Of a DNA stretch of 64,000 nucleotides, positions 3,150 through 60,213 are shown piece by piece. The notes below the pieces were generated by a model. That model had not been told where the DNA came from and did no database searches. It saw only the letters and a list, made by a program, of their open reading frames with translations. The stretch is from Macrostomum lignano (lineage: Eukaryota). Where the stretch lies: positions 1 through 64,000 of the forward strand of contig NIVC01002748.1 of NCBI GenBank assembly GCA_002269645.1, given 5' to 3'. The number at the start of each line of letters is the position of its first letter. Position 1 is the stretch's first letter. A program made the position numbers and the translations under genes.

Positions 3150-3189
3150 TTGCTAGTAACTGGCTACTCGTATTGCTAGTAACTGGCAG

Positions 3190-5040: not shown

Positions 5041-5874
5041 CGTTGAATGACGATCTCCGATGTCAGTTGTCGCGTAGATTGTTCCCACATGTCCATGGCT
5101 AGAATCCTCTGATCGGCACACGTTCTGCAGAGCATTAACGGTCTTGGAGCGACAAACTGCTGCCAGGTGTCCAACCTTTCCACACTTTCGGCACTGCGCA
5201 TCCCGAAATCGGCACTTTGACCTGACGTGTCCTGCTTTTCCGCATGTGTGGCAGTGACCAGTTTCACGAGGCTTTGTCGGTCCTTTGCGGTTGTCCAAAC
5301 TGTGCTGCTGCTTGTGGGCAGGCGTCTTCTCTGGTCTCACCCATCCGGAATGACTCTTCTTCTGCACCGCCGCGATTGTATCCGGCTTGCTTGTTGCCAT
5401 CCTAATCGACTCAGACAGCAAACCTTCTTGTATCGCGCCTTCCAAAGTGACATCCTCTCTTGAAAGAAGCTTTTGCTTTAGCACTTGATTCCACAAGCCA
5501 AATATGTACTGCGACAGAATTAGTTCGTCTCGGACATCACCGAATCTGCATTTGTTGGCTTGGCGCTTTAGACATTCGATGTAGGTAGCAATCGATTCAC
5601 CCTCTTTCTGCACCATGGAGTGAAGCACGTGTCTCTCATAGTGAAGCAATGTTTTGGGCTTAAAATGTGCGGTTAGCGAACTCTGGATATCATCGAACGT
5701 TACTTCGTCCTTCGTGATGTCTTTTGGCTTTGCAAGCTCTTCTATCAGCGTGAAGGCTGCGTCTCCGCATGTCGCTAGAAGTACTGCTTTGGAGTGAGCT
5801 TGCTTCCCTGAAGCCACCAAGTAAAACTGCAGTCTTTTGAAATACTGCTCAATCTCATGATAAGAAAGAGGCAA
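4936..5874 (-). CDS. Retrotransposon Gag with tandem CCHC zinc knuckles
   Basis: ORF track gives CHTCGKAGHVRSKC-RFRDAQ-CRKCGKVGHLAAVC and YIECLKRQANKCRFG, typical of Mag-clade gag. Exact start is uncertain. Confidence 0.88.
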   Translation of the reverse strand: MPLSYHEIEQYFKRLQFYLVASGKQAHSKAVLLATCGDAAFTLIEELAKPKDITKDEVTFDDIQSSLTAHFKPKTLLHYERHVLHSMVQKEGESIATYIECLKRQANKCRFGDVRDELILSQYIFGLWNQVLKQKLLSREDVTLEGAIQEGLLSESIRMATSKPDTIAAVQKKSHSGWVRPEKTPAHKQQHSLDNRKGPTKPRETGHCHTCGKAGHVRSKCRFRDAQCRKCGKVGHLAAVCRSKTVNALQNVCRSEDSSHGHVGTIYATTDIGDRHSTAIFIGYTGNGFPIAPGHTTHRRKHFRRSLHASGA

Positions 5875-5959
5875 TTCTCCAAGTCGAAAATCCAGCGGCT
5901 GAGTTATCAGTCCTGCGAACGTAAGGTAGTCAGTACACAGCTTCTTCAGTGAATCCAGT

Positions 5960-5977
5960 GACTTTTCCTCGTCGCCA
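5960..5977 (-). other. Primer binding site of the gypsy element
   Basis: Minus strand reads ...TAACA|TGGCGACGAGG immediately after the LTR end. Confidence 0.75.
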
Positions 5978-6132
5978 TGTTACGGTTGAAGAACGCAAAG
6001 GCACTTGGGTTTATGAATTGAAGGAGGGCGTTATTTGAGCAGCTCCAAATTGGCATGTGCACGAAGCTCGCTCTTATATTTCTTTACCCTTAAGGGCATT
6101 AAAGTTTCTAGCAAACAAGGTGTACGGTAACA
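5978..6132 (-). repeat. 5' LTR (~155 bp)
   Basis: TG...CA ends with short inverted termini (TGTTACCG...CCGTAACA on minus), abutting the PBS. Confidence 0.8.
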
Positions 6133-9261: not shown

Positions 9262-12200
9262 ATGTCTGATCACGGCAGCGCCACCATGCAGTCGTCCACT
9301 CTGCCCCTCGATGGCCGGGGTGCCACTGGTCGGAATGCCGAGTTCGAGAGCACAATGTCCAAGAAGGACTATTATACCCTGCGGGACAAGGGCGTGCCGT
9401 TCTATCAGTCCGGCACTATGCAGTCGCAGCAGTCCTACAACACGGCCAGCCGGCCGGCCAAGCCCTCCGGCAAGCTGAAGCCCATCGAGGTGGTGATGCT
9501 GGACGGCTCGGTGCACACATTCGATGTTGATGTGAGTGTCCAGTTTATCTCTAGGGGACAAGATATAGAAGTATAATCTCGTGTTTTGTCCGAGCTGCGC
9601 TCACAAGTTTATCAAGCTGCTTTTTCATTAACTGCTGCCGGAGACCGGCAAGCAAGCAAAGTTGCGGCGAAATTGCAGCTGCTCCTGTCTCTGCAGTGTT
9701 TTTTCTGGACGGATTTGTCTATGGCCAAACCCCAGTTAGCGCTGTGCAAAAGAGCCATTAATTGAAAAATCCGTTTAGAAAATCCAAATTTGCTTTGAAC
9801 GTAGTCACTCTCCAATAATGAACTCCAGAAGGTGAGATTTGTCAATTTAGTTCCTAATAATAATATTAATGAATTACACACCTTACACTGAAGGCTGCTG
9901 AAGGCTGTTTACAACTGCTCAGTCCAAGGACTGGGGTCGCCACACACAGCCTCAATTACCCCAGCTAATGCTGGCACCCATTTTACAGCTGGCTGAACTG
10001 AAGCAATGCAGAGTTAAGAGTCTTGCTCACTGACACAAATGTTCCAAGTGGGTCGGGAATCGAACCCGCGACGTTTCAGTCGTGAGTCCGACGCTCTGAC
10101 CACTGGGCTACAAGCCTAAGAAATAAAAATTCCATTTTCTCTAGTGTCATTTCTAAAGTAAAATTTGAGACCAGAACTGAGCAAAACTATATTCTGCTTT
10201 TGTTTTGTATTTTTTAAAGTGGTCTTTTATTTTATAAGAATCTAATCTTCTAATTTTCATATGTCTAGCAATAATTTCTCATTTATTTTGGTGCAATAAA
10301 ATAAAATAGCTAATAAAATAGCTAATCTTTGGGTTGCTATGCGGGGCTGATAATGCGCAGTTACAGAATAATCTGTCTGGGCTTAAGTCGCATATTTCAG
10401 CATTAAAATCTGTCCAGTTTTTCACATAGTCCAACTGCATGTAAATCTAGGAATGGAAATTGTTATACTTTACTCCCAATGTTCAAAGATTCCTTGCTTA
10501 TTTTAAACAACGCAGTTCCGCGTTCAATTAAACTACATGATACTTATTTAGCTCCAGACGCCGATATGTAGCGTTAGTAACTTTATAAAGCAAAAAATGT
10601 ACAAGGATATATTTTATGCAATTGGTAATTTTATTATTTTTCCTCTATTTTCCCACTCAACACAGCCCAATGGCAAGCCAACGGATCTGTTTGACGAGGT
10701 CTGCGTGGCGCTGGGCCTTCACGAGAAGGAGTACTTCGGCCTGTGCTTCCGCGACTCCAGCCAGATGTTTGTGAGTGCATTTAACACTTAAATTAGAGTG
10801 TGCCTTTAATTGAACTAGCTCAGCAGTCTATAGATCTTGAGACCCTTGACTCAGAGATCGCTCTAGTAGGCATCTAGTCTATGTCCATGTAGCCACTGAT
10901 ATTAGATCTATAGACGAAAAAGAATCTAGGGATTCTGGTTAGACTAAAACCCTGAAATTTTAGAAAGTGCCTAAATAGTCTTGAAATTATCTGATAGCCC
11001 TAGGAGTTATCTAGAATTCGTATAGAGGCTTTATAATTAATCTAGAGGCTTCGGAATCCATCTAGAGGCTTTAAAATCCATCTAGAGGCTTTTGAATTCA
11101 TCTATAGTCTTTAGAATTCATCTATGGTCTTTATAATTAATCTATAGTCTTTATAATTTACCTAGAGGCTTTAAAATCCATCTATACTCTTTTTTAGAAT
11201 ACATCTAGAGGCTTCGGAATCCATCTGTAGTCTTTAGAATACATCTAGAGGCTTCGGAATCCATCTGTAGTCTTTAGAATACATCTAGAGGCTTCGGAAT
11301 CCATCTGTAGTCTTTAGAATACATCTATATAGTCTTTAGAATCCATCTAGAGTCTTTAGAATCCATCTAGAGTCTTCAGAATCCATCTAGAGTCTTTAGA
11401 ATGCATCTATATAGTCTTTAGAATCCATCTAGAGTCTTTAGAATCCATCTAGAGTCTTCAGAATCCATCTAGAGTCTTTAGAATGCATCTATATAGTCTT
11501 TAGAATCCATCTAGAGTCTTTAGAATCCATCTAGAGTCTTTAGAATTCATCTCGAGAATTTAGAAACCATCTAGAGAAAAGGTTCGTTGCAATTTTATCG
11601 ATAGACTGACTGTAGGATCTATCAAGATATTCTGGGATACATTTAGTGACTCAGATCAACTAGAGATGATAGAATCTATAGACGTAAATCATCATAACCA
11701 TCAGATTCCATAAATCATCTGTAGTCTCTAGAGGCTAAACTATAGACTCAGGTATCCCTCTATAGACTTGAGAAACTATTAGGCTCTAGGGTATCGATCT
11801 ATGCATTGTAGAGTCTGTCTAACAGGTTTGCACCAAAACTGCATTTGTTTCAGTTCTGGCTTAATAACGAAAAGAAGCTCGGCAAGCAGATTGGCAGTGA
11901 GTTGGTTGATTGATTATTTTGTTTTATTTAATTCGACGCTCCTTATAGAAAGACAGCAACAAATTTAGCTATATATATATATAGAATAGAGCGGTCTGAA
12001 AGCGTCTCAGCATGCAGTTTATGACTCCTGCTGCCTGCTTCTCTGCCGCCGGTTTTGCGCGCGCAAAGCAAGAGCGGAGCTAACAAAACACGCCGATAGC
12101 ATAACAGAGAGTAAGTAATGAATTAGAGTAAGGAGAGCGAGGAGGGGTGTACATTTAATCTGGCGTCGTGTCTCATATTAAACTGCTTCTTTCGTCTCTC

Positions 12201-15200
12201 CTTTCGGGTTGCGCCCGCTTCACGCATAGTGGGTGTCTCGTCTCCTGTTATCTCTCTGCTTTGAGCAAACTAATGGTTTCGGGTTATTGCATATACAGAG
12301 CCAAGCTATGCTAATGCTAGACTATGGGTGCCTTATACTATGTACAAGCAATGCTCGTAAACCTGCCCCCCCCATGTCTAAGATACCGCAGAGCTGATTC
12401 TTAGAAATTCTGAACAGCTATTATAAAATGCCCTTCCGTCCGACTGGAGGTGACAGCGGGCTTGTGCTTATCAGTTGATATCCTGTCGTTGTTTTGATTG
12501 TTAAAATTACGATCGTAGGTCGAGTATAACAAAACAGCTCGATTGGTGTGAAGAATTCAATTTTTTTAGTGATAAGATTTTTGTTTGTTATAAATTCGCC
12601 CCTGTTAATAAAAAATTTCCGTAAACAAAGAATTCATATAACATTTGCTCAGGTGTTTTCCCTCTGTCAATCTTTGGTCTAGCTGCTATACAAATAGCCT
12701 AGCGTTATAATAGATAGATCGCTATAGTTATAATTATATAAAAATCTACAATACTTCAGACTAATGCACATTTCTATTGTAACATAAGGCTTGACTTGGG
12801 CTGGTATATTCTTCTCTGTTTGTAGCCTGAGGGTCCGCCTCTCTCTCTCCTCTCACTCTCTGGAAACTCACTCTGCAATAGCATTTTAGCAGCTAGCCTG
12901 TCCGATTAAGAGAGACTGGCCACACTTGATTGCACACTCCATTGCACACTCCGTTGCACACTCCATTGCACACTCTGCCCAACCCCCATCTATGGCTCTC
13001 CTGACCCTTGGGTCCTTCTTTTCTCTTCTCTGCCTCTCTCGCAGACTTTGGATTGGTGTTTTTGCAATGCTGCACACACGCACACACACAAGCATGAAGT
13101 TGCAGCAGCAGCAGCAGCAACAACTCTGCTTCAAGTTCGAACCGAGTAGTTTCGCCCGCCCATGTTTACTATTAATAGATATATTTTAGAATTTGCAGCT
13201 CCCTCTTTTGCTAACAGCCTAATTGTTGTTGTCGTTTTTTCATATTTGTTATCACTAAATGCTAGGGTTCGAATAACAGAGTTGGCTGACTCTGGAGTGC
13301 TGAGGGTCGAAGGACAGGAACTGTTCCTTCATCATTGCCAACAGTTCCTTCATCATTATCAACTGTTCCTTCATCATTGCCAACTGTTCCTTCATCATTA
13401 TCAACTGTTCATTCATCATTGCCAACTGTTCATTCATCATTGCCAACTGTTCATTCATCATTGCCAACTGTTCATTCATCATTGCCAACTGTTCATTCAT
13501 CATTGCCAACTGTTCATTCATCATTGCCAACTGTTCATTCATCATTGCCAACTGTTCATTCATCATTGCCAACTGTTCATTCATCATTGCCAACTGTTCA
13601 TTCATCATTATCAACTGTTCATTCATCATTGCCAACAGTTCATTCATCATTATCAACAGTTCCTTCATCATTATCAACAGTTCCTTCATCATTATCAACT
13701 GTTCATTCATCATTATCAACTGTTCATTCATCATTGCCAACTGTTCATTCATCATTGCCAACTGTTCATTCATCATTGCCAACTGTTCATTCATCATTGC
13801 CAACTGTTCATTCATCATTGCCAACTGTTCATTCATCATTGCCAACTGTTCATTCATCATTGCCAACTGTTCATTCATCATTATCAACTGTTCATTCATC
13901 ATTGCCAACGGTTCATTCATCATTGCCAACTGTTCATTCATCATTGCCAACTGTTCATTCATCATTGCCAACTGTTCATTCATCATTATCAACGGTTCAT
14001 TCATCATTGCCAACTGTTCATTCATCATTGCCAACTGTTCATTCATCATTATCAACTGTTCATTCATCATTGCCAACGGTTCATTCATCATTGCCAACTG
14101 TTCATTCATCATTGCCAACTGTTCATTCATCATTATCAACTGTTCATTCATCATTATCAACTGTTCATTCATCATTGCCAACGGTTCATTCATCATTGCC
14201 AACGGTTCATTCATCATTGCCAACTGTTCATTCATCATTGCCAACTGTTCATTCATCATTATCAACTGTTCATTCATCATTGCCAACGGTTCATTCATCA
14301 TTGCCAACTGTTCATTCATCATTGCCAACTGTTCATTCATCATTATCAACGGTTCATTCATCATTGCCAACTGTTCATTCATCATTATCAACGGTTCATT
14401 CATCATTGCCAACTGTTCATTTCTCATTATCAACTGTTCATTCATCATTGCCAACTGTTCATTCATCATTGCCAACTGTTCATTCATCATTGCCAACTGT
14501 TCATTCATCATTATCAATTGTTCATTCATCATTGCCAACTGTTCATTCATCATTGCCAACTGTTCATTCATCATTGCCAACTGTTCATTCATCATTGCCA
14601 ACTGTTCATTCATCATTGCCAACTGTTCATTCATCATTGCCAACTGTTCATTCATCATTGCCAACTGTTCATTCATCATTATCAACGGTTCATTCATCAT
14701 TGCCAACTGTTCATTCATCATTGCCAACTGTTCATTCATCATTATCAACGGTTCATTCATCATTGCCAACTGTTCATTCATCATTGCCAACTGTTCATTC
14801 ATCATTATCAACTGTTCATTCATCATTGCCAACTGTTCATTCATCATTGCCAACTGTTCATTCATCATTATCAACTGTTCATTCATCATTGCCAACTGTT
14901 CATTCATCATTGCCAACTGTTCATTCATCATTATCAACTGTTCATTCATCATTATCAACTGTTCATTCATCATTATCAACGGTTCATTCATCATTGCCAA
15001 CTGTTCATTCATCATTGCCAACTGTTCATTCATCATTGCCAACTGTTCATTCATCATTATCAATTGTTCATTCATCATTGCCAACTGTTCATTCATCATT
15101 ATCAATTGTTCATTCATCATTGCCAACTGTTCATTCATCATTATCAACTGTTCCTTCATCATTGCCAACTGTTCATTCATCATTATCAACTGTTCCTTCA

Positions 15201-18200
15201 TCATTGCCAACTGTTCATTCATCATTATCAACGGTTCATTCCGCATGTCAACTGTTCATTCATCATGTCAACTATTTCATTCGCAACACTTAGTGTCTCA
15301 TTCACTACACTTTTTTTCATGGCTGTTTTCAACAGATTCTTGCTTTGTATTAAGCAGATTTATTTTCCCACAATGCCATTCTAAATTCCGATTATGACTG
15401 TTCAACCATTAAGTGACGGTTACTACGAGCTAAATAGCTAAATGCAAAATAAGAAACTATTCGAGTCAGCTTCTGCGCAGTTTAGTGACAAACCCGCGGC
15501 CAGCAGAGCCCCGGCAGCCGTCGGAGCAGCTTTAGTCAACGGCCTGGCACACAGCACAAAAAAATTCTGAAGCCGTGTCTGAGAGAAGAGGCTTGATGTG
15601 TGGGGGGGGGGTATTTAGTCACTGTCTACCCCCACCGCCCTTTGTGTGCGTTCCACAAGTCGTACGCGAAGTGGTGACTAAGGCCTTGGGCGGAGGCTGC
15701 TGGCAGACATATTCAGGCTGCTTGTTGTATCTCATAATTTTGGTTTGGCTGCAGTCAGCCTTAAGCTGTCTGCTTCCACTTTCTGAATATGGGTATCATT
15801 GCTTCAGCCATGGAAAAGAAATTTCGGTAAATTGCTATCACAAGCCCCAAATTTTTATTTCAGTTAAGCATTACTGCAAGATTTTGGTAAAGAGATCACT
15901 AGGCCATGCGGTTTGCTTACATTCTCTAATAGTTGCCTGAAACAGCTAGTCAGACCGCTACAAAAGTCAGGAAACCTATAATTGAAGCATGGAACATAAG
16001 ACACACAAGCAAGGGCTTTAAATTAAAGCGTCGGTAAGGGCACTTCTTCTCCTGGCCAAATCTTATAAGCAAATCTTTGACCAAACAGTTTAGAATTTCT
16101 ATAAGTCTATTTTCGACAATTTCCACCGCTATATATGTTTCATCTGCGACCTTCGTATGCTATAGATGGCTTTATTCGAATGAGGCATGTTGCTTACTAG
16201 ACAACTTTGTTTCAAGCCTAACTGCGTACTGGAGGGGTAGTTGAAGGTGGCTGAAGTAGCACGGAGGGTATTGCTGCAGGGGCACTGAAGTAGCACGGAG
16301 GGTATTGCTGCAGGGGCACTGAAGTAGCACGGAGGGTATTGCTGCAGGGGCACTGAAGTAGCACGGAGGGTATTGCTGCAGGGGCACTGAAGAAGCACGG
16401 AGGGTATTGCTGCAGGGGCACTGAAGTAGCACGGAGGGTATTGCTGCAGGGGCACTGAAGTAGCTCAGAGGGTATTGCTGCAGGGGCACTGAAGTATCAC
16501 GGAGGGTATTGCTGCAGGGGCACTGAAGTATCACGGAAAGTATTGCTGCAGGGGCACTGAAGTATCACGGAAAGTATTGCTGCAGGGGCACTGAAGTATC
16601 ACGGAAAGTATTGCTGCAGGGGCACTGAAGTATCACGGAAAGTATTGCTGCAGGGGCACTGAAGTATCACGGAAAGTATTGCTGCAGGGGCACTGAAGTA
16701 TCACGGAGGGTAGCAGCAGGGGCACTGAAGTAGCACGGAGGGTAGCAGCAGGGGCACTGAAGTATCACGGAGGGTAGCAGCAGGACCCACGAGTTAAGAC
16801 CCACACTATGTCATCAAGCATTCCAGTTGATTCGATATCTCTTTTTCTCAAATTTGTTTCCGCCAGAGAACGAGTGGAAGCTGGAGTTCATGGTGAAGTT
16901 CTACCCGCCCGACCCGGAGAATCTGCGGGAGAATCTCACCCGCTACTACATGGCGCTGCAGATTCGGCAGAACCTCATGGCCGAGCTGCTGCCTTGCAGT
17001 TTCATCACCTACATCATCCTGGGCAGCTACGTGCTGCAGTCTGAAGTTGGCGATTTCGATCCGTTGGACGAGAAGATGAACTCGCTGATGTACTTGAATG
17101 TAAGTCTGTAAGCGCAGAGCTGACGATGAGAAAGTCAGGGCTCGCTTGATTGACTTTTTATCGAATTGCTACAGCTCATGTAGTACCTCGACATGTCAAT
17201 AAACAAAGGCTCAATAAGGATCTAGAACAGGGGTCAGGTAGAGAACATAGCGGATGACTGCGGGACAGAGATTTGAGAGAAGACAGCTGAGAAGAGACAC
17301 AAACCCTGGGCAGACCGGATTGCTATCGTGAAGTTTCCGAGGACCCAATGGCCGGATAGAGAGGCTTCGCCAACCCCTGATCTAGAATATCCCCATTTAT
17401 CCGGTATTATCCCTCTCAAGATGGAAAGAGTTGGCAATTGATTTTCCTAGTTTAAACTTCGCCGCCCAGGACTGCCCGTTCTGTCCGGAGGAGTACCGAA
17501 ACAACGCCGAGCTGGCCGAGCGAGTCAGCGAGCTGCACCGCACGCACCAGCGCATGACTCCGGAGGAGGCCGACCTGCACTTCCTGCGGAACGCCAAGAA
17601 GCTCGCCATGTACGGCGTCGATTTGCACGAGTCTAAGGACGCCTCTGGCGAGGAGGTCCTCCTTGGAGTTTACCACGGCGGCGTTCTGGTGTACCGCAAC
17701 AACCTCCGGATTAACCGCTTCTCCTGGCCGAAGATTCTCAAAGTGTCCTACAAGGGCAGCACGCTCAAGGTGTCGATTCGCACCGGGGATAACGAGCGCG
17801 ACCCCAAGTCGGAGACTCTGTTTGAGTTCAAGTGCGCCTCATCGAAGCTGGCTAAGCGACTCTGGCGGGCTGTGGTTGAGCATCACGGATTCTTCAGGTT
17901 AGCTTATTGTGCTCATGAACACAAGTTCCTACTAGTCTATTTATATCACTCTTTTTTAGAAACAATTCAATTATTGATTTAATCTTCTAATAGTATTTTT
18001 GTTTTCGAGTTGAAAACGCATTTAACCTACTTATAGTAAGCAAGTAGCAAATAATGTTAGCAAAATTGAATGATCTTCAGATTGAAGTCCGCCGAGAAAC
18101 CGCAGAAGCCGCACATTCCCGGCACCTTCAAGGGCAAGTGGGGCACCGGCATCCGGGACTCGCAGAACGACCAGTCGGGCGCCTACCAGGAGGTGCAAGT

Positions 18201-21200
18201 TACCCCTGACATGCGCAAGAGCTTCAAGAAGAAGGGTACGCATTGCTGCTTTTGCCGATGTTCATATCTGTCGCATTTTCAGCTCCTACGCTGACCATCA
18301 AGCAAATACATGGTAATCTTTCTGACAAGGCAGCTACTTTTAGAGTTGGATTGGCAGAGCATCAGAGCCGGGGTGTCAGAGAGCTAGAGTGTCAGAGAGC
18401 CAGGGTGCCAGGGAGCCAGGGTGTCAGGGAGCCAGGGTGTCAGAGAGCCAGGGTGTCAGAGAGCCAGGGTGTCAGGGAGCCAGGGTGTCAGAGCCAGGGT
18501 GTCAGAGCCAGGGTGCCAGGGAGCCAGGGTATCAAAGAGCCAGGGTGTCAGAGAGCCAGGGTGCCAGGGAGCCAGAGTGTCAGGGAGCCAGGGTGTCAGA
18601 GAGCCAGGGTGTCAGAGAGCCAGGGTGTCAGAGAGCCAGGGTGTCAGAGAGCCAGGGTGTCAGAGAGCCAGAGTGTCAGAGAGCCAGGGTGTCAGAGAGC
18701 CAGGGTGTCAGAGCCAGGGTGTCAGAGCCAGGGTGTCAGAGAGCCAGGGTGTCAGAGAGCCAGGGTGTCAGGGAGCCAGGGTGTCAGAGAGCCAGGGTGT
18801 CAGAAAGCTAGAGTGTCAGAGAGCCAGGGTGCCAGGGAGCCAGGGTATCAAAGAGCCAGGGTGTCAGAGCCAGGGTGTCAAAGAGCCAGGGTGTCAGAGC
18901 CAGGGTGTCAGAGCCAGGGTGTCAGAGCCAGGGTGTCAAAGAGCCAGGGTGTCAGAGCCAGGGTGTCAGAGAGCCAGGGTGTCAGAGAGCCAGGGTGTCA
19001 GAGCCAGGGTGTCAGAGCCAGGGTGTCAAAGAGCCAGGGTGTCAAAGAGCCAGGGTGTCAGAGCCAGGGTGTCAGAGCCAGGGTGTCAAAGAGCCAGGGT
19101 GTCAGAGCCAGGGTGTCAGAGCCAGGGTGTCAAAGAGCCAGGGTGTCAGAGCCAGGGTGTCAGAGAGCCAGGGTGTCAGAGAGCCAGGATGTCAGAGAGC
19201 CAGGGTGTCAGAGAGCCAGGGTGTCAGAGCCAGGGTGTCAGAGCCAGGGTGTCAGAGCCAGGGTGTCAGAGCCAGGGTGTCAAAGAGCCAGGGTGTCAGA
19301 GCCAGGGTGTCAGAGCCAGGGTGTCAGAGAGCCAGGGTGTCAGAGCCAGGGTGTCAGAGCCAGGGTGTCAGAGCCAGGGTGTCAAAGAGCCAGGGTGTCA
19401 GAGCCAGGGTGTCAGAGCCAGGGTGTCAGAGAGCCAGGGTGTCAGAGAGCCAGGGTGTCAGCCATCAGCACTATGCAAATAGTCTAATTCTAGTAACTAA
19501 CAAGTAATTTCTAAATAGCATGTGTAACGTTAAAAGCATCGATTTAAAAAGTTCTTTACGTACTTTAAAAGCACTATTTATTAATTAACTTTGATCAGCA
19601 GGCCCAGTGAATCGCTGGCACATCCACACAATTGTACTATTATTATTGCAATGCACTTTTAATTTCACTGCAGGCGGCCCTACAAAAGCTAAAGTAGACG
19701 AAGGATTCGACGGTCTGTTGATAGTTTTTAATTTAAAAAACTTGTAGAATATATTTGTAATATATTTGGATATTGCTAACCAATGCCTAACTCTGGTACT
19801 TTAATGTTTTTTTCTGTCTAACACACTCGCAATGGCGGTGTGGCATAATATCAATTTGGGCAATACAATTCAAGCCAGTAGTGCGAACGTCTGGACTGTT
19901 TAGTCCAGATGCTCTGTTCAAAGGTCTATGATTCTAAAAAAAGGAGAAATAGAAGTACAAACTGGTCACTTTAATTGTCATTTAAATATTTGATGTGGCA
20001 TGAATTTAACTGCTATAATATTAAGATCTGCTTGCTTCAGTAGACGAATAAATTATTAATGCCCATTGAAATTTTTTACGATAGAAGCATACGAATATTC
20101 CACAGCCTGCTATTTGTGCGATGAATTCTTTGTAAGAAACGCTTGACTGCCGTGCTTATAATTTTCAGCTTAGGCGACTACGCTATTACAAATCCGATTG
20201 ATGCACTTTTCAGCCTGTGATTCTCTGCAATATATCAAGCAGTTTAGTAAGGGAGGGGTCGATTGAGGTCACACAGTGCGGGACTGTGGAGAACAGGGGT
20301 CGATTGAGGTCACACAGTGCGGGACTGAGGAGAACAGGGGTCGATTGAGGTCACACAAATGCGGGACTGAGGAGAACAGGGATCGATTGAGGTCACACAA
20401 GTGCGGGACTGAGGAGAACAGGGGTCGATTGAGGTCACACAAGTGCGGGACGCAAAGGGTTTAACTAAGGTCACGTAGTGCGGAATGGACCAAAAGAAAA
20501 ACGAAAAGGTCAGCCAAGGTCAACTCGGTGCGAAATCTTTAAGAGAGAAAGGTCAATCAGTTCGGCGTTCGGATATCCGGGGACTAATGAATGAGCTTTA
20601 GTTTAACTGTCTCAAACAGTTTCTATTAAAATTGTTAAAACAAAATCAAAACATTTTCAAATCATCATTCGCGCAGACGACGCCTACAACCGTGAGGCTC
20701 GAACGGGCGCCGGCGGCGCTGGCACCTCGGGCTTGACCAACGACGACACCTACGCGATGTCCAACCGACAGGGCGCCGGCATGGGCGCGCCGCTGCTGCC
20801 GCCGGTGAACCGACGAGAGCAGTACGACCGCCGGCCCGAGCTGGACGTTGACAGACCGATTCGCTGGCAGATGAATCCATCAGACGCCGACCCCTACCTG
20901 GCCGCTGGCATGGACCCCGTGCGCTGCGCCGGCGCCTGCCCGGCCGGGGTTCGCGACTGGCAGGGCTGCCGGGCGGACCGCGGCATCCGGGCCTCGGCTG
21001 GCGGCAAGTGGTACTACGAGACCGCTGTGCGGGGAGACGGGCCCTCCGACCAGCCGGTGGAGGCGCGGGTCGGCTGGGCGGACGGCAACGCCGATCTCAA
21101 CCTCGGACGGGTGAGACGAGCAGCCAGGATGGGATGAGAGGAACCAATTAGGGGACTACAAGGGTGTGGAGGGATGTACTCGTAGATAGGAGCGGAGAGG

Positions 21201-24200
21201 TGTAGATAGGAGCGGGGAGGTGTAGATAGGAGCGGGGAGGTGTAGATAGGAGCGGGGAGGTGTAGATAGGAGCGGGGAGGTGTAGATAGGAGCGGGGAGG
21301 TGTAGATAGGAGCGGAGAGGTGTAGATAGGAGCGAGAGGAGAGGTGTAGAGAAGAGTGGATAATAGAAAATCAGCCAATGCCTTCCTCCCGCCCCCGCCC
21401 CCAGGACAACCACGGCTGCGGTTTTGGCACCGACCCGGCCGGCCGACACGCCCAGAAGATGCTAGATGGAGTCTCCGAGCAATACGGCGTCCAGCTGATG
21501 ACTGGTGACATAGTCGGTGCCTACCTGGACCTCGACAACGGCACCGTCACCTACGCGGTCAACGGCAAAGAGCTAGGGCCCGCGCACCAGCTGCCAGCCG
21601 ACTTCTTTACTCCGACAGGCACTGCTGGCGGTAACAGGAAGTCCCGTGGTGGCGACGGTCCCCCCGGCGGCCCGCAGGCTGTTTATCCGGCCGCCTGCCT
21701 TCGCGATGGCGCCGCAGCTGACTGGAACTTTGGCGACGATCCGTCCAGACCGCTCGCCTATCCGCCCGGCGGAGCCTGGCGTCCGGTGGGCCTGGCGCTC
21801 GCCAACCAGACTTCGGAAAATCCACGCAGCTGGCGGTTAAACCCGCACGACACCAGCGGGCCGGGCCTGCAACTGGGACCCGACCAGCTGTCCGCGCAGG
21901 GCCAGCTGGGCTTTGGTTGGCAGGGCGTTCGGGCCAACAAGGTGAGTACAGCTTCCTGTGATAATGTGTGCGCTTCTGTATCCTTTAGGAGTAGCGGCTG
22001 TCTGTGGAAGAATCCATTGGAAGTAGCGGCTGTCTGTGGAAGAATCCATTGGAAGTAGCGGCTGTTTGTGGAAGAATCCATTGGAAGTAGCGGCTGTCTG
22101 TGGAAGAATCCATTGGAAGTAGCGGCTGTTTGTGGAAGAATCCATTGGAAGTAGCGGTTGCCTGTGGAAGAATCCATTGGAAGTAGCGGCTGTTTGTGGA
22201 AGAATCCATTGGAAGTAGCGGTTGCCTGTGGAAGAATCCATTGGAAGTAGCGGTTGCCTGTGGAAGAATCCATTGGAAGTAGTGGCTGCCTGTGGAAGAA
22301 TCCATTGGAAGTAGCGGCTGCCTGTGGAAGAATCCATTGGAAGTAGCGGCTGCCTGTGGAAGAATCCATTGGAAGTAGCGGCTGCCTGTGGAAGAATCCA
22401 TTGGAAGGAGCGGTTGCCTGTGGAAGAATCCATTGGAAGTAGCGGCTGTCTGTGGAAGAATCCATTGGAAGGAGCGGCTGCCTGTGGAAGAATCCATTGG
22501 AAGTAACGGCTGCCTGTGGAAGAATCCACTGGAAGTAGCGGCTGCCTGTGGAAGAATCCATTGGAAGTAGCGGCTGCCTGTGGAAGAATCCATTGGAAGT
22601 AGCGGCTGCCTGTGGAAGAATCCATTGGAAGTAGCGGCTGCCTAAGATTAAAAACCCAGGCAGTGCCTAAGGCACTTGGCCCAAAACAAGTTTATTTGTT
22701 TAAAATCAATTACGGGTTCGGCGTAGATAAGAAAGGAGGGGTGGAGTGCGGGACTGAGAAAGGGGGTAAAATTGAAGAGCCAATCAGAAAGCTGCGCAAG
22801 AGAGAGAGAACCAGATTGAACTAGACTAAGAGAGAACAGTAAACGAGTTGAATAGATGACTAAGAAAGTCGCTGCAACACCAACACTTCCAGGGCCTGAA
22901 AGGCAGCGAGGGCGGCCGGTTCTACTGGGAGGCGGAGCCCCTGGAGTCCGGCGGCCTCGGCCGTGTCGGCTGGACCACCGAGTCCGGCTTGCTGGACGTC
23001 GGGCGCGACGCCAACGGCTGGGGCTACGGCGCCGACCACGAAGGCTTCGGCCTGGCCGGCAACCAGGGCAAGAAGCTATTCGACGACGAGATCGAAGCCT
23101 ACGGCGAGCCCTACGCCAAAGGCGACGTCATTGGCTGTTTTTTCGATTTCAACAATGGCGAACTGCAGTTCGCTAAGAACGGCCAGCCGTTCGGACCGGC
23201 CTACAGTCTGCAGCAGGACATGCTCGAGCGCGAGTCCTTCTTCCCAACTGTTGCCATGCGAGACCAGACGTTGGACGTGAATCTTGGACAGCGGCCGTTC
23301 CGTTATCCACCTGGTCCGGACTGGACGCCTGTCTGCCTGGCGCCCGAGTCTTCCATCCAGCCGAGTAGCAGGGCCGGCATTATGGAGGTTCGGATGATGC
23401 AACATCATTTTCTTGCATTCTCGCTCATAGCAGGGGCCGGCGTAGCTAGAGAGGGGCAGGGGACGGCACCCCCTCTTCTAATAGGCTGACAAAATCTGGG
23501 GCGCCCCCTTTACAGTAGCTGTGGCGCCACTGGTGCTGCTGGCGCGCCTGGTGCTGCTGGCGCCACTGGAGGTGCTGGCGCCCCTGGTGCTGCTGGCGCC
23601 ACTGGTGCTTCTGGCGCCACTGGTGCTGCTGGCGCGCCTGGTGCTGCTGGCGCCACTGGAGGTGCTGGCGCCCCTGGTGCTGCTGGCGCTACTGGTGCTG
23701 CTGGCGCGCCTAGTGCTGCTGGCGCCACTGGTGCTCTGGTGCTAGCCTCATCGATGACACCCCCTCCCCAATGATTGCGCCCTAAAGATGCACCTCACAG
23801 AAGCGATCCAATGAAGAAAACGTGACTACGCCCGTAACTCGTATTAGAGCAGAAGCATAACATTGATCTCGCAAGCAGTTCAATATTAATTTGATTCAAG
23901 CTAGGGGACGAATTCACAATTCACTCAATGGCATAACGATTTTCCAGCGCAAGCCAAAAAAACGAGGCTTCAAATACGCCGACCCGAACTCGATCCGGGA
24001 CAGCCTCGCCAAACGGGTTTGGGGCGCGAATTGTTTTTTAGACTCCTTTCTAAATCTAAGCACAGAACTGCATGCTTAATAATTGTTGCACTTTCTTTTC
24101 GGTTGCTTTACTGTTTTTTACTCGGAGTACGTCTGGAATTATAGCTTATTGGCTTCAAGCTCGACATCGGTTTGCATTTTATCAAATATTTATCCTTGTC

Positions 24201-27200
24201 GCCGCCTTTTGTCCCCCTGCATGCCAATCGTTGCCTCTTATGCTAGCTTGTAATGAAACTATTTCCACATTTTTTCCACTAGTTGGTGCAAACATAGAAA
24301 AAACACAGTAACAGTATACATGCAAACAGGCACTGGTTAGCTCGTAAAGAAAATCAAGAAAGCTCAAAGAAAACTACTGAAAAAATGATTTAGTGATTGA
24401 TTAATCGAACACGCACACTGCTAACTAGTGGTGAACTAGCCTGATCCAACATCATTTCCCTACTCAAGTCTCGCTGAAACACCAACCCATCTTTATGTAA
24501 GGTAACTTCCTCACTTCCAAGGCTCGCTATGACACCCACCCCACTCCATTTCCTTACCCCTCGACTCGCTTTAACAAACACCTCACTCCCCCCAAGCCTC
24601 GCTGAGACACCCACCCCACTCCATTTCCTTACCCCTCGACTCGCTTTAACAAACACCTCACTCCCCCAAGCCTCGCTGAGACACCCACCCCACTCCATTT
24701 CCTTACCCCTCGACTCGCTTTAACAAACACCTCACTCCGCCCAAGCCTCGCTGAGACACCCACCCCACTCCATTTCCTTACCCCTCGACTCGCTTTAACA
24801 AACACCGCACTCCGCCCAAGCCTCGCTGAGACACCCACCCCACTCCATTTCCTTACCCCTCGACTCGCTTTAACAAACACCGCACTCCGCCCAAGCCTCG
24901 CTGAGACACCCACCCCACTCCATTTCCTTACCCCTCAAGACTGGCTATGACACACATGATTTCTTTAGCACTTCATTTCACGTATGCTTTTATGCTTTTC
25001 ATTTTCTTTGTTTTCTTTGAACTGCACAATAATTTATCCAACTCTATTGTATTTTTAAAATATGCTGACTACTCACTCTTCTTGCTCAATTTTTCAACTA
25101 TTGCGCAGGCCTCCAACCTACCGGCGGTTGACCAGAAATACGACATGATCAGGGAGAACAAGCCCCAGATCCGAGCTCCCAGCCCCAAGCCAAGGGGCAA
25201 CGCTGGCGGCCCAGAGGGTCAGTCGGTCACGGTTCTGGAGAGTCGCACCGAGGTCAGTTGCTTTGAATTTCCCTATTTAAATTCCATTTAGGAAAACTAA
25301 GGTTAGTTCTGAGTTAGCTATTCTGTTGTTCAACTATGATTGTCTTTATATTCACCGAAAGGACGTTGAAAAAGTTGAATCTCAGCGGCGGCAGCAACAA
25401 GCGGATGCGACTCGGAAGCAGCAGAATGAGGAGCTTAGTGTCACTACTGTAAATAGGCGATTGTGAATTTTGAAATCTTCTTTAAAAAAAACGTATAAAA
25501 CAGAAAATTCTTATTAATATTTATGTTTACACGAGTATGACATGCATGTTTTTGCATGCATTTGATATATGACCATAAACATAAACATAAACTTAAGTAT
25601 GCCATTGCAACACGGATATAGATTACAGTTAACGAAATGGCAGTGTTAATCAATATTTTTAACTGAAAGAAATGGGCAGTTCTATCAATTCAGATATTCT
25701 CATCTGGTTTACAGCTAGATATTCTCATGCTGCCTTTGACCAAGCATTAAGTTTTTTACACCAGTGCATTATGCTGTAAACCAAATAGCAATATCCTTTT
25801 CTAAATGGAGATTCGATAAAATGCATGTCACTGGTTTTGTAGTGGCGCATATGTTCCATATTATCTTACTCATTCTGTTTTTTTATCCATATTGGCTAGA
25901 AACCTGTCTATCGGTTCGTCCATGTTGACTAGATTAGCAATCCATTCTATTCCTGCACCCATGTATTGGCTAGATTAGCAATCCACTGCCATCCTATCGC
26001 AGAGCGAGCAAGTCGGCGAGCCCGAGGAGGAAATAGTGACGTACGTTGACGAGCACGGCAACACTGTCACGAAGAAGATTGTGCGCAGCAAGAAGACCCG
26101 CCAGGTGATCACCAGCAAGGTGATTGAGACGCGCGGCCCGGCAGTGCCGGAAGGCGACGCCGCCTCGTCTGAGCATTTGGAGAAGTCGGTGAGTGCAGTA
26201 AGATACTGTAAACGTGAGTGAGTCCGGTTAAGTGTTCAGGTGATAGAAGCCGCCTTCTAAACGGCGCAGGTGATAAGACCCATTTACCGAATGGCCCAGG
26301 TGATGATAAATGCCTTCAAATGGCCCAGGCGATAAGAGTCACCCATCAGGTGGCCCAGACCCCAGGTGACAAAGGAGCCTTGAAACTTGCTCGAAATTAA
26401 GCTTTTTAAATTGGCTTCAACTCATCGCAAATCTCCAATTCGGCAGATCAAGTCTGGCGCATCCAAGCTGACCCGCAAGGAGACTCGCACAGGCCGGCGC
26501 AATCCGGCCATCTACGAGGAGGGCGGCGAAGAGGACGATGTAAGATTTCATGCGCGGATACGTGGGGCAACCGTGTTCAACCCCTCCTTCACAAGCGGGT
26601 CAATCCAGGGCTTCAGGCTGTTCATTGTTGATTGAATAGCTTAACAGACTGACCTTAATAAATTTCTAGGTATCTTAAGAGTAGTACAAAATATTCTTTA
26701 CTGTGTTCTTATCCTTTATAACACCACAATACACCACGATTCGCTCCAAGACTAAAGATTCTTTATCTGTCTTGATTGTGGCTCGACGAGGGTGAGAAAA
26801 GTGGAGCGTCTCCGCACGGCTAGTGGGTTGGAAAATGGAGTGAGGTGGGTATTGCAGCGCGGCTAGTGGGTTAAAAAATGGAGTGAGGTGGGTGTCGCAG
26901 CGCGGCTAGTAGGTGTAGGAAATGGAGTGAGGTGGGTGTCGCAGCGCGGCTAGTGGGTGTAGGAAATGGAGTGAGGTGGGTGTCGCGGCGCGGCTAGTGG
27001 GTTAGAAAATGGAGTGAGGGAGGCGTCGCTGCGCGGCAAAGCTTTTTATGTCTGCTAGACTGTTGTCTTTATTTAATCAAATCATTGCTGATTGGTAAGA
27101 ATCCAAGGCAATATGAATAGCTTTTGTATTGGTCTTTCTACGAGCTATGTCTAGAAGGGGACCTACATGAACTTAGTTAAATGACTATGAATGGTAGATT

Positions 27201-27414
27201 TTTTTAAAGGATTTGAGAAAGCTAATTTATTAGTTCCACTTCTATTGAAACTCATCCACTTTAACTCATTTTTTTCCAGATTCTAAACGACATTATCTTC
27301 GAGCAGACCGGCCTAAGCCGAAAAGACAAAATCATGGACGAGAATGTGAACGATTTCAGCATGTCCACCATCGATTCCAGGAAATCGCCTCCGAAGCATG
27401 AGAGCGAAATCTAG
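9262..27414 (+). CDS. Protein 4.1/Coracle-family FERM protein with two tandem DDX1-type SPRY domains (14 exons, 1114 aa)
   Basis: Exons 9262-9531, 10666-10770, 11854-11896, 16867-17099, 17470-17897, 18081-18235, 20677-21110, 21405-21941, 22893-23387, 25109-25252, 25362-25448, 26003-26188, 26447-26539, 27280-27414. All introns are GT-AG, phases match and the total is 3345 nt with no internal stop; an in-frame TAA lies 2 codons before the ATG. FERM motifs: [73 protein letters not shown] motifs: WQMNP..WQGCRA..YYE..RVGW..YLDLDNG..NGKELG..NFG. Confidence 0.9.
9582..9750. mobile_element. Inverted internal copy of the 2456-2732 MITE family
   Basis: tttgtccgagctgcgctcacaagtttatcaagctgc...gtctatggccaaacccc is the reverse complement of ~2525-2690 with few changes. 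Confidence 0.85.
9890..10114 (-). mobile_element. tRNA-derived SINE, family A, with CORE-like central domain
   Basis: Minus strand shows A box TAGCCCAGTGG and B box GGTTCGATTCC, then gagcaagactcttaactc...cagctgtaaaatggg resembling the CORE domain. The anticodon stem does not pair. A degenerate second copy lies at ~31050-31140. Confidence 0.8.
11040..11575. repeat. Degenerate ~20-22-bp tandem repeat (ctagagtctttagaatccat), FERM intron 2
   Basis: Repeated tctagag/atccatc units visible. Confidence 0.85.
13318..15270. repeat. 21-bp minisatellite (caactgttcattcatcattgc/at), ~92 copies, FERM intron 3
   Basis: Direct inspection. It explains the 650-740 aa low-complexity ORFs in three frames. Confidence 0.97.
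16245..16785. repeat. 34-bp minisatellite (acggagggtattgctgcaggggcactgaagtagc), FERM intron 3
   Basis: Unit starts at 16261 and 16295; about 15 copies. Confidence 0.95.
18365..19462. repeat. 14/16-bp minisatellite (gtgtcaga[ga]gccagg), FERM intron 6
   Basis: Direct inspection. Confidence 0.95.
20255..20450. repeat. 41-42-bp tandem repeat, ~4.5 copies, intron 6
   Basis: gtcgattgaggtcacacagtgcgggactg at 20258, 20299, 20340 and onward. Confidence 0.9.
21170..21345. repeat. 20-bp tandem repeat (tgtagataggagcggggagg), intron 7
   Basis: Direct inspection. Confidence 0.92.
21985..22640. repeat. 32-bp minisatellite (gaagaatccattggaagtagcggctgcctgtg), ~20 copies, intron 8
   Basis: Period 32 (22021 to 22053). 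Confidence 0.95.
23518..23745. repeat. GC-rich 9/18-bp-based tandem repeat (ctggtgctgctggcgcc), intron 9
   Basis: Direct inspection. Confidence 0.88.
24525..24938. repeat. 74-75-bp tandem repeat, ~5.5 copies, intron 9
   Basis: acacccacccc at 24532, 24607, 24681, 24756 and onward. Confidence 0.93.
26812..27040. repeat. 41-42-bp tandem repeat (ggaaatggagtgaggtgggtgtcgcagcgcggctagtgggt), intron 13
   Basis: About 5 copies; same unit as 27698-28222. Confidence 0.9.
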
Positions 27415-60021: not shown

Positions 60022-60213
60022 GGGTTTGGCCATAGACAAATCCGTCGAGACATAACACTGCAGAGACAGGAGCAGCTGGAAACTCGCCGCAACTTTGCTT
60101 GCTTGCCGGTCCCTGGCAGCAGTTCATGAAAAAGCAGCTTGATAAACTTGTGAGCGCAGCTCGGACAAAACACCTGCTGGCTGCATCTGCAATTCGGAAG
60201 TCCAGCAGGTGAG
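60022..60213. mobile_element. One-ended copy of the MITE family, joined to a SINE-B fragment (~59955-60010)
   Basis: gggtttggccatagacaaatccgtc...ggacaaaacacctgctggctgcatctgcaattcggaagtccagcaggtgag matches 2525-2731. Confidence 0.85.

What the first reader, a model, noticed from the sequence alone, without database searches (positions are those of the whole stretch)
9262..27414. Unrecognised architecture: protein 4.1/Coracle FERM fused to two tandem DDX1-type SPRY domains
The FERM exons splice in frame (phase 1, 18235 to 20677) into two SPRY domains and on to a terminal exon, forming one stop-free 1114-aa ORF over 14 GT-AG exons. SPRY1 ([58 protein letters not shown]) and SPRY2 ([45 protein letters not shown]) follow the SPRY insert of DEAD-box helicase DDX1 as I recall it (WQMNPYD..EWHGCRA..HYYE..RVGW). 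Protein 4.1/Coracle normally has FERM-FA-(SAB)-CTD with no SPRY. The inference is capture and duplication of a DDX1-like interaction module in a cortical/septate-junction scaffold, potentially linking the membrane skeleton to RNP or other SPRY ligands.
Basis: partly seen in the sequence, partly recalled or inferred. Interest (0 to 1): 0.88.

Follow-up and report, generated by a model that had tools for sequence, protein, structure and literature searches.

The report
Flatworm protein 4.1 carrying two SPRY domains
The window holds one real gene for a flatworm version of the membrane-skeleton protein 4.1/Coracle, whose middle part is two DDX1-like SPRY binding domains; unnamed or mis-named relatives already exist in databases for a dozen flatworm species, but I found no paper on them.

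Summary
On the + strand, 9262-27414 encodes a stop-free, all GT-AG gene: 4.1-type FERM, a degenerate FA-like stretch, two tandem SPRY domains and a weakly 4.1-CTD-like tail.

two small in-frame exons, 19674-19712 and 23948-24016. The product is 1085-1121 aa depending on their use, not 1114.
- **One gene, not two:** intron-less RNA contigs from a close relative (complete 1088-aa ORF, 80% identical end to end) break exactly at my exon boundaries and run from FERM through both SPRYs to the stop. A trematode RNA contig and Macrostomum lignano models and genomic locus show the same order.
- **SPRY type:** SPRY2 is DDX1-type (4XW3: sequence E=1e-29; fold TM 0.86-0.88, rmsd 1.6 Å). A tree is consistent with one capture and one duplication before macrostomids and parasitic flatworms split.
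- **"Unrecognised" is only half right:** FERM+2xSPRY proteins are already in public databases for trematodes, cestodes, monogeneans and M. lignano. They are unnamed or wrongly called "DDX1". I found none outside flatworms and no paper on them.
- **Function** (a membrane-cortex adaptor with a lineage-specific ligand platform) is inference only.

Moderately interesting: a phylum-wide variant of a known family.

The parts
9262..9531 (+). Exon 1: start ATG, disordered N-terminus, start of FERM_N
   Evidence: ATG at 9262; GT donor after 9531; maps to the relative's cDNA 172-363
10666..10770 (+). Exon 2: FERM_N
   Evidence: Pfam FERM_N; AG/GT; cDNA block ends at 10770
11854..11896 (+). Exon 3: 43-nt FERM exon ([14 protein letters not shown])
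   Evidence: AG/GT, phase 0->1; matches the 4.1 motif 'WL..K...KQ' and the relative's 'FWLKSEKKIGKQIG'
16867..17099 (+). Exon 4: FERM_M
   Evidence: Pfam FERM_M; cDNA block starts exactly at 16867; 78% identical to the M. lignano exon at L001:2425-2658
17470..17897 (+). Exon 5: FERM_M and FERM_C
   Evidence: Pfam FERM_M and FERM_C; cDNA block 17467-17895; 69% identical to L001:7268-7693
18081..18235 (+). Exon 6: degenerate FA-like linker, ends '...MRKSFKKK', phase 1
   Evidence: AG/GT; cDNA block ends at 18234; FA-like '[10 protein letters not shown]' compared with classical 'GSKFRYSGRT'; Pfam FA not detected
19674..19712 (+).
   Evidence: AG/GT; corresponds to the 39 nt (SGPQKAKVDDGFD) between the exon-6 and exon-7 blocks of the relative's cDNA; absent from M. 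lignano models, so probably optional
20677..21110 (+). Exon 7: linker plus first half of SPRY1; the only exon that converts phase 1 to phase 0
   Evidence: AG/GT; cDNA block 20676-21111; motifs WQMNP, DWQGCRA, WYYE, RVGW
21405..21941 (+). Exon 8: second half of SPRY1 (with a disordered 18-residue loop) and start of SPRY2
   Evidence: Pfam SPRY; cDNA block 21404-21942; AF2 pLDDT<50 only at residues 157-174 of the SPRY pair
22893..23387 (+). Exon 9: SPRY2 (DDX1-type)
   Evidence: Pfam SPRY E=4e-19; 4XW3 E=1e-29; Foldseek 4XW3 TM 0.86-0.88
23948..24016 (+).
   Evidence: AG/GT; matches M. lignano 'KSKGFAYADPRMLQESLSKR'; by eye resembles 'RKVKGWSYIDPS(I/V)LEP' in S. japonicum and Echinostoma; skipped in the relative's cDNA
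25109..25252 (+). Exon 10: linker ([23 protein letters not shown]...)
   Evidence: AG/GT phase 0-0; matches the relative's '[22 protein letters not shown]' and M. lignano paralogue P0002
26003..26188 (+). Exon 11: conserved tail segment ([38 protein letters not shown])
   Evidence: cDNA block 26001-26192; conserved in M. lignano; by eye similar in Schistocephalus, Mesocestoides and Cichlidogyrus tails
26447..26539 (+). Exon 12: 'ETRTGRRN...EEGGEEDD', start of the CTD-like end
   Evidence: AG/GT; cDNA block ends at 26539; aligns to 4.1 CTD 'ETRIERK.VI..EGE'
27280..27414 (+). Exon 13: terminal exon, '[12 protein letters not shown]...' and stop TAG 27412-27414
   Evidence: cDNA block 27281-27413; flatworm-tail profile against 4.1 CTD profile, hhalign E=5e-5, probability 67%

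Best explanation
Window 9262-27414 (+) is a single protein-coding gene of a macrostomid-like flatworm.

**What it encodes.** A member of a flatworm-wide family of protein 4.1/Coracle-type proteins with this layout:
- a disordered N-terminus
- a three-lobed 4.1-type FERM domain
- a degenerate FA-like stretch
- two tandem SPRY beta-sandwich domains of the DDX1 type
- an optional short basic cassette
- a tail whose end is weakly homologous to the 4.1 C-terminal domain (CTD)

The SPRY pair sits where classical 4.1 proteins have their variable or spectrin-actin-binding region.

**Origin (inferred from the tree and the distribution).** A DDX1-like SPRY domain was copied into the 4.1 gene and duplicated in tandem. 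This happened before the macrostomid lineage and the parasitic flatworms (trematodes, cestodes, monogeneans) split.

**Mechanism (inferred from what the domain families do, not tested).** The FERM domain anchors the protein to the cytoplasmic tails of membrane proteins at the cell cortex or septate junctions. The SPRY pair is predicted to be a folded two-domain unit and offers a lineage-specific protein-binding platform. Two small in-frame exons (39 nt and 69 nt) on either side of the SPRY pair tune the linkers by alternative splicing.
For: **Shown**
- A stop-free, all-GT-AG model with FERM_N/M/C and 2xSPRY.
- Intron-less RNA-derived contigs from two sequencing runs of a close relative (3522 and 3521 nt, complete 1088-aa ORF) align end to end with the model at 80% identity. 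Their blastn blocks stop at my exon boundaries, including 18234 and 20676.
- A 3975-nt intron-less contig from a trematode sample carries a complete 1105-aa FERM_N/M/C+SPRY ORF.
- M. lignano models join FERM to SPRY ('MRKSFRKK|EDAFSTYE') and SPRYx2 to the same tail. In the M. lignano contig the FERM exons lie directly upstream of the SPRY exons on the same strand.
- M. lignano has no Met before SPRY1 in the exon-7 equivalent, so the SPRYs cannot start their own ORF there.
- Exon 6 ends in phase 1, exon 7 is the only 1->0 exon, and all later exons are 0-0. FERM and tail are therefore in frame only through the first SPRY exon.
- FERM+2xSPRY occurs in at least 8 further flatworm species.
- SPRY2 against DDX1 SPRY 4XW3: E=1e-29 by sequence; TM 0.86-0.88 and rmsd 1.6 A by fold.
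- AF2 model of the SPRY pair: pLDDT 84, pTM 0.74.
- NJ tree: flatworm SPRY1+SPRY2 form a clade (78% bootstrap). The SPRY1 and SPRY2 subclades each contain both macrostomid and neodermatan members.
- Tail against 4.1 CTD: hhalign E=5e-5.
Against: - There is no RNA from the source organism itself; the transcript evidence comes from relatives.
- Pfam detects neither FA nor 4_1_CTD in the model. The CTD link rests on a 25-column profile match at 67% probability, and the FA link on a motif seen by eye.
- Support for separate SPRY1 and SPRY2 clades is only 50-56% in a simple NJ tree.
- Nothing here bears on localisation, ligands or phenotype, so the mechanism is inference from domain families.
- I did not test whether flatworms also keep a classical SPRY-less 4.1.
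Confidence: 0.85

Rival explanations
1. There are two adjacent genes: a FERM-only gene ending after exon 6, and a separate SPRY-SPRY-tail gene whose mRNA starts at the 20677 acceptor, for example by spliced-leader trans-splicing. The continuous ORF would then be a coincidence of frames.
For: - The NCBI M. lignano model PAA53167.1 is 5'-partial and begins exactly at the exon-7 equivalent.
- The window has in-frame Met codons in exon 7 upstream of SPRY1 ('[12 protein letters not shown]').
- Read-through of the exon-6 donor meets a stop at 18291, so a FERM-only product is possible.
- SPRY exons are more GC-rich (0.64-0.73) than FERM exons (0.44-0.61).
Against: - cDNA contigs of a close relative and of a trematode carry FERM and SPRYs in one complete ORF.
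- The partial start of the M. lignano model is explained by the contig. The 3' end and donor of exon 6 are replaced by a minisatellite in that contig, while other M. lignano models cross the junction.
- M. lignano has no Met before SPRY1.
- The same architecture recurs in at least 8 other flatworm species.
Confidence: 0.04
2. It is one gene, but the SPRY-containing mRNA is a minor isoform. The main product would be a FERM-only or otherwise SPRY-less 4.1, so the fusion would have little functional weight.
For: - 4.1 genes are known for heavy alternative splicing (established knowledge; many isoforms are listed).
- Exons 8 to 12 are all phase 0-0 and could be skipped in frame.
- Two optional small exons were demonstrated here.
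Against: - The only assembled full-length transcripts found, from two runs of the relative and one trematode run, all contain both SPRYs.
- Both SPRYs are conserved as folded domains across deep flatworm divergences, which argues for selection on them.
- Exon 7 (half of SPRY1) cannot be skipped without losing the frame of the tail.
Confidence: 0.1
3. The apparent fusion is an artefact: a chimeric assembly of the window, or a chimeric transcript assembly.
For: - The region is full of minisatellites, which are error-prone to assemble.
- M. lignano gene models of this locus contain frameshifts and truncations.
Against: Independent sources give the same gene order: the window, the M. lignano contig, RNA contigs from three runs, and gene models from at least 8 further species produced by different projects.
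Confidence: 0.01

Closest known systems
Protein 4.1 family (EPB41, EPB41L1-3; Drosophila Coracle; Platynereis Cora)
   Same: - Three-lobed FERM domain, 44-51% identical to classical 4.1 proteins, which are the best non-flatworm matches.
- The FERM is followed by an FA-like stretch.
- The tail end aligns to the end of the 4.1 CTD.
- Use of small in-frame optional exons.
   Different: - Two SPRY domains lie between the FA-like stretch and the tail. None of the 119 classical 4.1 proteins listed has SPRY.
- FA and CTD are too diverged for Pfam.
- There is no spectrin-actin-binding domain.
SPRY domain of the DEAD-box helicase DDX1 (PDB 4XW3; PMC4555926)
   Same: - SPRY2 is 30-40% identical to DDX1 SPRYs, with E=1e-29 to 4XW3.
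- The predicted fold superposes on 4XW3 at rmsd 1.6 A and TM 0.86-0.88.
- After the flatworm family, true DDX1 helicases are the next-best hits in an exhaustive search.
   Different: - There is no helicase core (no DEAD or Helicase_C).
- There are two copies in tandem rather than one inserted in RecA1.
- SPRY1 is more diverged and carries an 18-residue disordered loop.
- The database names 'DDX1' given to the Clonorchis, S. japonicum and Cichlidogyrus homologues are misnomers.
Unnamed flatworm FERM+2xSPRY proteins (e.g. Dicrocoelium CAH8602423.1, Echinostoma A0A183A9Y8, Mesocestoides A0A158QTF4, M. lignano A0A1I8FBJ9 and PAA53167.1)
   Same: - Same domain order.
- Same FERM-SPRY junction as M. 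lignano.
- Similar tail motifs: 'GEPE..V..Y...DG..V.R' and 'DEALN.AI..TT.L'.
   Different: - 36-52% identity in the SPRY pair, so this is a distinct orthologue in a different species.
- Neodermatans appear to have two paralogue groups.
- The 39-nt micro-exon was seen only in the window and its close relative.

Membership tests
Protein 4.1 / Coracle family | FERM domain (N, M and C lobes) most similar to the 4.1 subfamily | tested here: met
   Pfam FERM_N, FERM_M and FERM_C all above cut-off. The best non-flatworm hits are all 4.1, band 4.1-like or Cora proteins at 44-51% identity.
Protein 4.1 / Coracle family | FERM-adjacent (FA) domain, Pfam PF08736, directly after FERM_C | tested here: inconclusive
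   Pfam FA was not detected even at E<=1. By eye there is a degenerate motif at the right place: window '[10 protein letters not shown]', relative 'GTFKGRYATG', Cichlidogyrus 'RKYQFSGR', against classical 'GSKFRYSGRT'.
Protein 4.1 / Coracle family | C-terminal domain (4_1_CTD, PF05902) | tested here: inconclusive
   - Pfam negative.
- A small CTD HMM was insignificant.
- Window+M. lignano profile against the CTD profile: E=0.003, probability 10%.
- Ten-species flatworm tail profile against the CTD profile: E=5e-5, probability 67%, over 25 columns at the equivalent position.
Protein 4.1 / Coracle family | Spectrin-actin-binding domain (SAB, PF04382; vertebrate 4.1 only) | tested here: not met
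   No SAB hit in Pfam. The listed invertebrate 4.1 proteins also lack it, so this does not argue against membership.
SPRY domain proteins, DDX1-type SPRY | SPRY beta-sandwich (PF00622), closest to the DDX1 SPRY | tested here: met
   - Two Pfam SPRY stretches, E=1e-30.
- 4XW3 is the best solved relative by sequence (E=1e-29, SPRY2) and by fold (TM 0.86-0.88).
- SPRY1 is more diverged; its best PDB sequence match is a RyR SPRY at E=1e-10.
DDX1 helicase (orthologue) | DEAD-box helicase core with the SPRY inserted in RecA-like domain 1 | tested here: not met
   There are no DEAD or Helicase_C domains in the model or in its flatworm homologues. True DDX1 hits show DEAD+SPRY. This is not a DDX1.
Flatworm FERM+2xSPRY family (unnamed) | FERM_N/M/C, then two SPRYs, then a conserved tail, in one polypeptide | tested here: met
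   End-to-end 80% identity to P0129. The same Pfam architecture occurs in P0129, P0130, P0133, P0134 and P0135.

The most novel reading that the evidence does not exclude
The FERM+2xSPRY protein is the only 4.1/Coracle orthologue of rhabditophoran flatworms. Under this reading the SPRY pair has replaced the usual cytoskeleton-binding middle region. It would then connect septate-junction or tegument membrane proteins to a flatworm-specific partner, possibly components that bind the DDX1 SPRY in other animals (RNA-processing complexes). That would make it a phylum-specific, conserved cortical scaffold, including in parasitic species.
Probability: 0.15. Interest if true: 0.7.

Novelty: new variant of a known kind. 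Interest (0 to 1): 0.48.

Why it matters
- It is a clean example of domain capture and tandem duplication inside a very well-studied scaffold family. It was apparently fixed early in flatworm evolution and kept in free-living and parasitic lineages.
- It corrects database names: several homologues are labelled "DDX1".
- It gives an experimentally tractable entry point. Macrostomum is a laboratory model, so one can ask what a DDX1-type SPRY domain binds, which is still unknown even for DDX1 itself.
- Because the protein is conserved and lineage-specific in trematodes, cestodes and monogeneans, its role at the cell cortex or tegument may interest parasitologists.
- It does not open a long-standing question, and the architecture is already present, though unremarked, in public databases.

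Tried and rejected
- **Full-length protein search:** a search with the 1108-aa model timed out. I replaced it with partial queries and one exhaustive phmmer search.
- **Pfam FA and 4_1_CTD:** negative on the model and on the isolated linker and tail, even at E<=1.
- **Home-made CTD HMM:** five sequences gave insignificant scores. Only a broader flatworm profile gave a usable match.
- **The look-up of encoding contigs:** nothing on record for P0001, P0006 or P0130.
- **Literature:** FERM+SPRY+'protein 4.1' returned only incidental co-mentions. FERM+SPRY+Platyhelminthes returned nothing. The run accession SRR28338163 returned nothing, so the relative's species stays unidentified.
- **Acceptor at 17451:** considered for exon 5 and rejected because it breaks the frame.
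- **Independent SPRY gene starting at the Met in exon 7:** considered and rejected, because that Met is not conserved in M. lignano and the cDNAs are continuous.
- **GC-richness of the SPRY exons:** considered as a sign of a separate gene and rejected for the same reason.
Full report
**1. What is in the sequence**

Fourteen of the 15 motif strings I searched for lie on the + strand in one frame between 20865 and 23169. '[10 protein letters not shown]' spans a splice junction and appears only in the spliced protein. Stop-free segments on the + strand carry FERM_N (10552-10788), FERM_M (16761-17108), FERM_M and FERM_C (17386-17979) and SPRY (21330-22055 and 22860-23486) by Pfam.

I built an exon chain by hand from GT/AG sites and frame continuity. 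The exons are:
- FERM and linker: 9262-9531, 10666-10770, 11854-11896, 16867-17099, 17470-17897, 18081-18235
- SPRY pair: 20677-21110, 21405-21941, 22893-23387
- Tail: 25109-25252, 26003-26188, 26447-26539, 27280-27414

All introns are GT-AG and the chain has no stop. Pfam on the spliced protein gives FERM_N, FERM_M, FERM_C and two SPRY stretches.

Two further small exons emerged from comparison with relatives:
- 19674-19712: 39 nt, phase 1->1, encoding [13 protein letters not shown]
- 23948-24016: 69 nt, phase 0->0, encoding [23 protein letters not shown]

Depending on their use the product is 1085, 1098, 1108 or 1121 aa. I could not reproduce 1114 aa.

**2. One gene or two?**

This was the critical point, and four lines of evidence agree.

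(a) *Transcripts of relatives.*
- An exhaustive phmmer search with the SPRY pair found P0129 (1088 aa, 84% identical over the query).
- P0129 is encoded as a complete ORF on contigs of 3522 and 3521 nt assembled from two public sequencing runs. The window's orthologous gene spans 18 kb, so these contigs can only be spliced RNA.
- The 1098-aa window model aligns with P0129 over its whole length at 80% identity.
- blastn of the contig against the window gives blocks that stop at my exon boundaries. Examples are 16867, 18234, 20676-21111, 21404-21942, 22891, 26539 and 27281-27413.
- Only 39 nt of transcript lie between the exon-6 and exon-7 blocks, and these match the micro-exon.
- The same transcript goes directly from the end of SPRY2 to '[11 protein letters not shown]'.
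- A second, distant example is a 3975-nt contig from another run. It carries a complete 1105-aa ORF with FERM_N/M/C and SPRY and clusters at 90% identity with Dicrocoelium dendriticum proteins.

(b) *Macrostomum lignano models.*
- A0A1I8HQF5 runs from FERM into SPRY1.
- A0A1I8FBJ9 runs from FERM_M/C across 'MRKSFRKK|EDAFSTYE' into both SPRYs.
- PAA53167.1 runs from 'EDAFSTYE' through both SPRYs and the 69-nt cassette equivalent to a tail ending 'SFLNDAIYQQTGF...', which matches the window's '[12 protein letters not shown]...'.

(c) *The M. lignano genomic contig.*
- In NIVC01003118.1 the FERM exons (L001:2425-2661, 7268-7693, 9300-9473) lie on the same strand directly upstream of the first SPRY exon at 10001.
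- The NCBI model is 5'-partial because, in that contig, the last codons and donor of exon 6 are replaced by a ~22-nt minisatellite.
- M. lignano has no Met between the junction and SPRY1, so the SPRYs cannot begin an ORF of their own there.

(d) *Exon phases.* Exon 6 ends in phase 1, exon 7 is the only 1->0 exon, and every later exon is 0-0. The FERM and the conserved tail are therefore in frame only through the first SPRY exon.

I conclude that this is one gene. The probability of the two-gene reading is a few per cent.

**3. What the parts are**

*FERM.* Of the best 120 relatives of the FERM region, 119 are classical 4.1, band 4.1-like or Cora proteins at 44-51% identity. Their architecture is FERM+FA with or without CTD and SAB, and none has SPRY. 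The remaining hit is the M. lignano homologue.

*FA.* Pfam does not detect it. A degenerate motif sits at the right place. Classical 4.1 has 'GSKFRYSGRT', the neodermatan homologues have 'SRKYHY' or 'RKYQFSGR', and the window has '[10 protein letters not shown]'.

*SPRY pair.*
- SPRY2 matches the human DDX1 SPRY structure 4XW3 at E=1e-29. SPRY1 is more diverged; its best PDB sequence match is a ryanodine-receptor SPRY at E=1e-10.
- An AlphaFold2 model of the pair, built from a six-sequence alignment, has mean pLDDT 84 and pTM 0.74. The only disordered part is an 18-residue loop in SPRY1.
- Its best structural match is 4XW3 (TM 0.86-0.88 normalised to the target, rmsd 1.6 A).
- The pTM value suggests a fixed mutual orientation of the two domains. 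That is my inference.

*Tail.*
- Pfam CTD is negative.
- A profile of ten flatworm tails matches a profile of 4.1 CTD ends over 25 columns: 'DEALN.AI.ETT.LD....V' against 'DHDAALAEAI..VT.MNPDLSV'. hhalign gives E=5e-5 and probability 67%.
- I treat CTD homology as likely but not proven.

**4. Distribution and origin**

The 14 hits with E<1e-30 in the exhaustive search are all flatworm proteins or fragments, as far as they carry a name:
- the unnamed relative
- Dicrocoelium dendriticum
- Clonorchis sinensis (named 'DDX1, partial')
- Paragonimus kellicotti
- Echinostoma caproni
- Mesocestoides corti (two clusters)
- Cichlidogyrus casuarinus (two; one named 'DEAD box helicase 1')
- Schistocephalus solidus
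- Protopolystoma xenopodis
- M. lignano

Pfam shows at least one FERM lobe plus two SPRYs in nine of the ten longest. Five of these have all three lobes; the others are N-terminally truncated. The tenth, Paragonimus, has SPRY only.

A profile search added four more species: Schistosoma japonicum (named 'DDX1'), Heterobilharzia, Dibothriocephalus and Rodentolepis (FERM_C+SPRY).

Below these come genuine DDX1 helicases (DEAD+SPRY) and unrelated SPRY architectures.

An NJ tree of SPRY domains (178 columns, 100 bootstraps) shows the following:
- All flatworm SPRY1 and SPRY2 group in one clade (78% support), apart from DDX1, HNRNPUL1 and RNF123 SPRYs.
- SPRY1 (50%) and SPRY2 (56%) subclades each contain macrostomid and neodermatan members.
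- Neodermatans fall into two well-supported paralogue groups (86-99%).

This fits one capture of a DDX1-like SPRY and one tandem duplication before these lineages split. The support is modest and the method is simple.

**5. Mechanism**

Nothing here tests function. From established knowledge of the families:
- 4.1 FERM domains bind cytoplasmic tails of membrane proteins and MAGUKs at the cortex or septate junctions.
- SPRY domains are protein-interaction modules.
- For the DDX1 SPRY the partner is unknown. A conserved positively charged patch, rather than the usual 'surface A' loops, was proposed as its interface (PMC4555926).

The best-supported reading is a membrane-cortex adaptor. Its variable middle region has been replaced by a two-SPRY ligand platform, and the linkers on both sides are tuned by small optional exons.

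**6. Novelty and verdict**

- 'Unrecognised' holds for the literature I could search. It does not hold for the databases, where the architecture is present for about a dozen flatworm species under uninformative or wrong names.
- I rate it a new variant of a known kind and moderately interesting.

**7. Source organism**

- The closest named relative is M. lignano: 69-78% identity in FERM exons and 42-61% in SPRY exons. This is much closer than to any non-flatworm.
- An unnamed species, 80% identical at protein level, is closer still.
- The window's minisatellite-filled introns are matched, in the one orthologous intron I examined, by an unrelated minisatellite in the M. lignano locus.
- The species itself was not identified.

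Noticed in passing
window 11012-11577, 13319-15282, 16251-16776, 18364-19461, 20254-20451, 21990-22643, 23518-23739, 24517-24936, 26817-27037; L001:9474-9990: Most introns of the gene are largely filled by a different minisatellite (periods 16-82 nt, up to 94 copies), and the same is true of much of the rest of the window. The orthologous FERM-SPRY intron of M. lignano also holds a minisatellite, of unrelated sequence, which has swallowed the end of exon 6 in that assembly.
   Followed up: partly
window 3156-5979 (-): Retrotransposon with long open frames: gag with a CCHC zinc knuckle (4939-5979), and reverse transcriptase plus RNase H (3156-4571). It looks young. It lies between the upstream KH/Tudor gene and the 4.1 gene.
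   Followed up: partly
window ~1110-2191 (+): Exons with a KH domain (1110-1424) and a Tudor domain (1961-2191). This is probably a TDRKH-like gene on the same strand upstream.
   Followed up: partly
window 31327-31662 and 33028-33489 (+): A PAN/Apple-domain exon and a fibrinogen C-terminal-domain exon downstream of the 4.1 gene, possibly parts of one secreted-protein gene.
   Followed up: partly
window 51702-53309 (-): A 536-codon open frame with a rhodopsin-family 7TM domain: an apparently intron-less GPCR gene.
   Followed up: partly
window 2415-2836 (-), 9555-9908, 30766-31035, 59958-60256 (-): A dispersed repeat whose translations share 'LLDFRIANAASRCF...[15 protein letters not shown]'. 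One copy lies in intron 1 of the 4.1 gene. It is probably a non-autonomous mobile element.
   Followed up: no
P0131 (Clonorchis GAA30691.2), P0135 (Cichlidogyrus KAL3319268.1), P0293 (Schistosoma japonicum): Public records name these proteins 'ATP-dependent RNA helicase DDX1' or 'DEAD box helicase 1'. P0131 and P0135 scanned here have FERM and SPRY domains and no helicase domain; P0293 carries only SPRY in the precomputed Pfam column. The names are best-hit artefacts.
   Followed up: yes
window 21405-21941 (residues 157-174 of the SPRY pair): SPRY1 of the window carries an extra Gly/Pro-rich loop ([19 protein letters not shown]) that is absent from M. lignano and predicted to be disordered. 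The SPRY exons are also markedly more GC-rich (0.64-0.73) than the FERM exons (0.44-0.61).
   Followed up: partly
NJ tree of SPRY domains; P0134 and P0137 (Mesocestoides), P0135 and P0138 (Cichlidogyrus); P0001 and P0002 (M. lignano): Neodermatans seem to have two paralogues of the FERM+2xSPRY gene (two groups with 86-99% bootstrap support). M. lignano also has a second, more window-like copy, P0002, whose model is riddled with frameshifts.
   Followed up: partly
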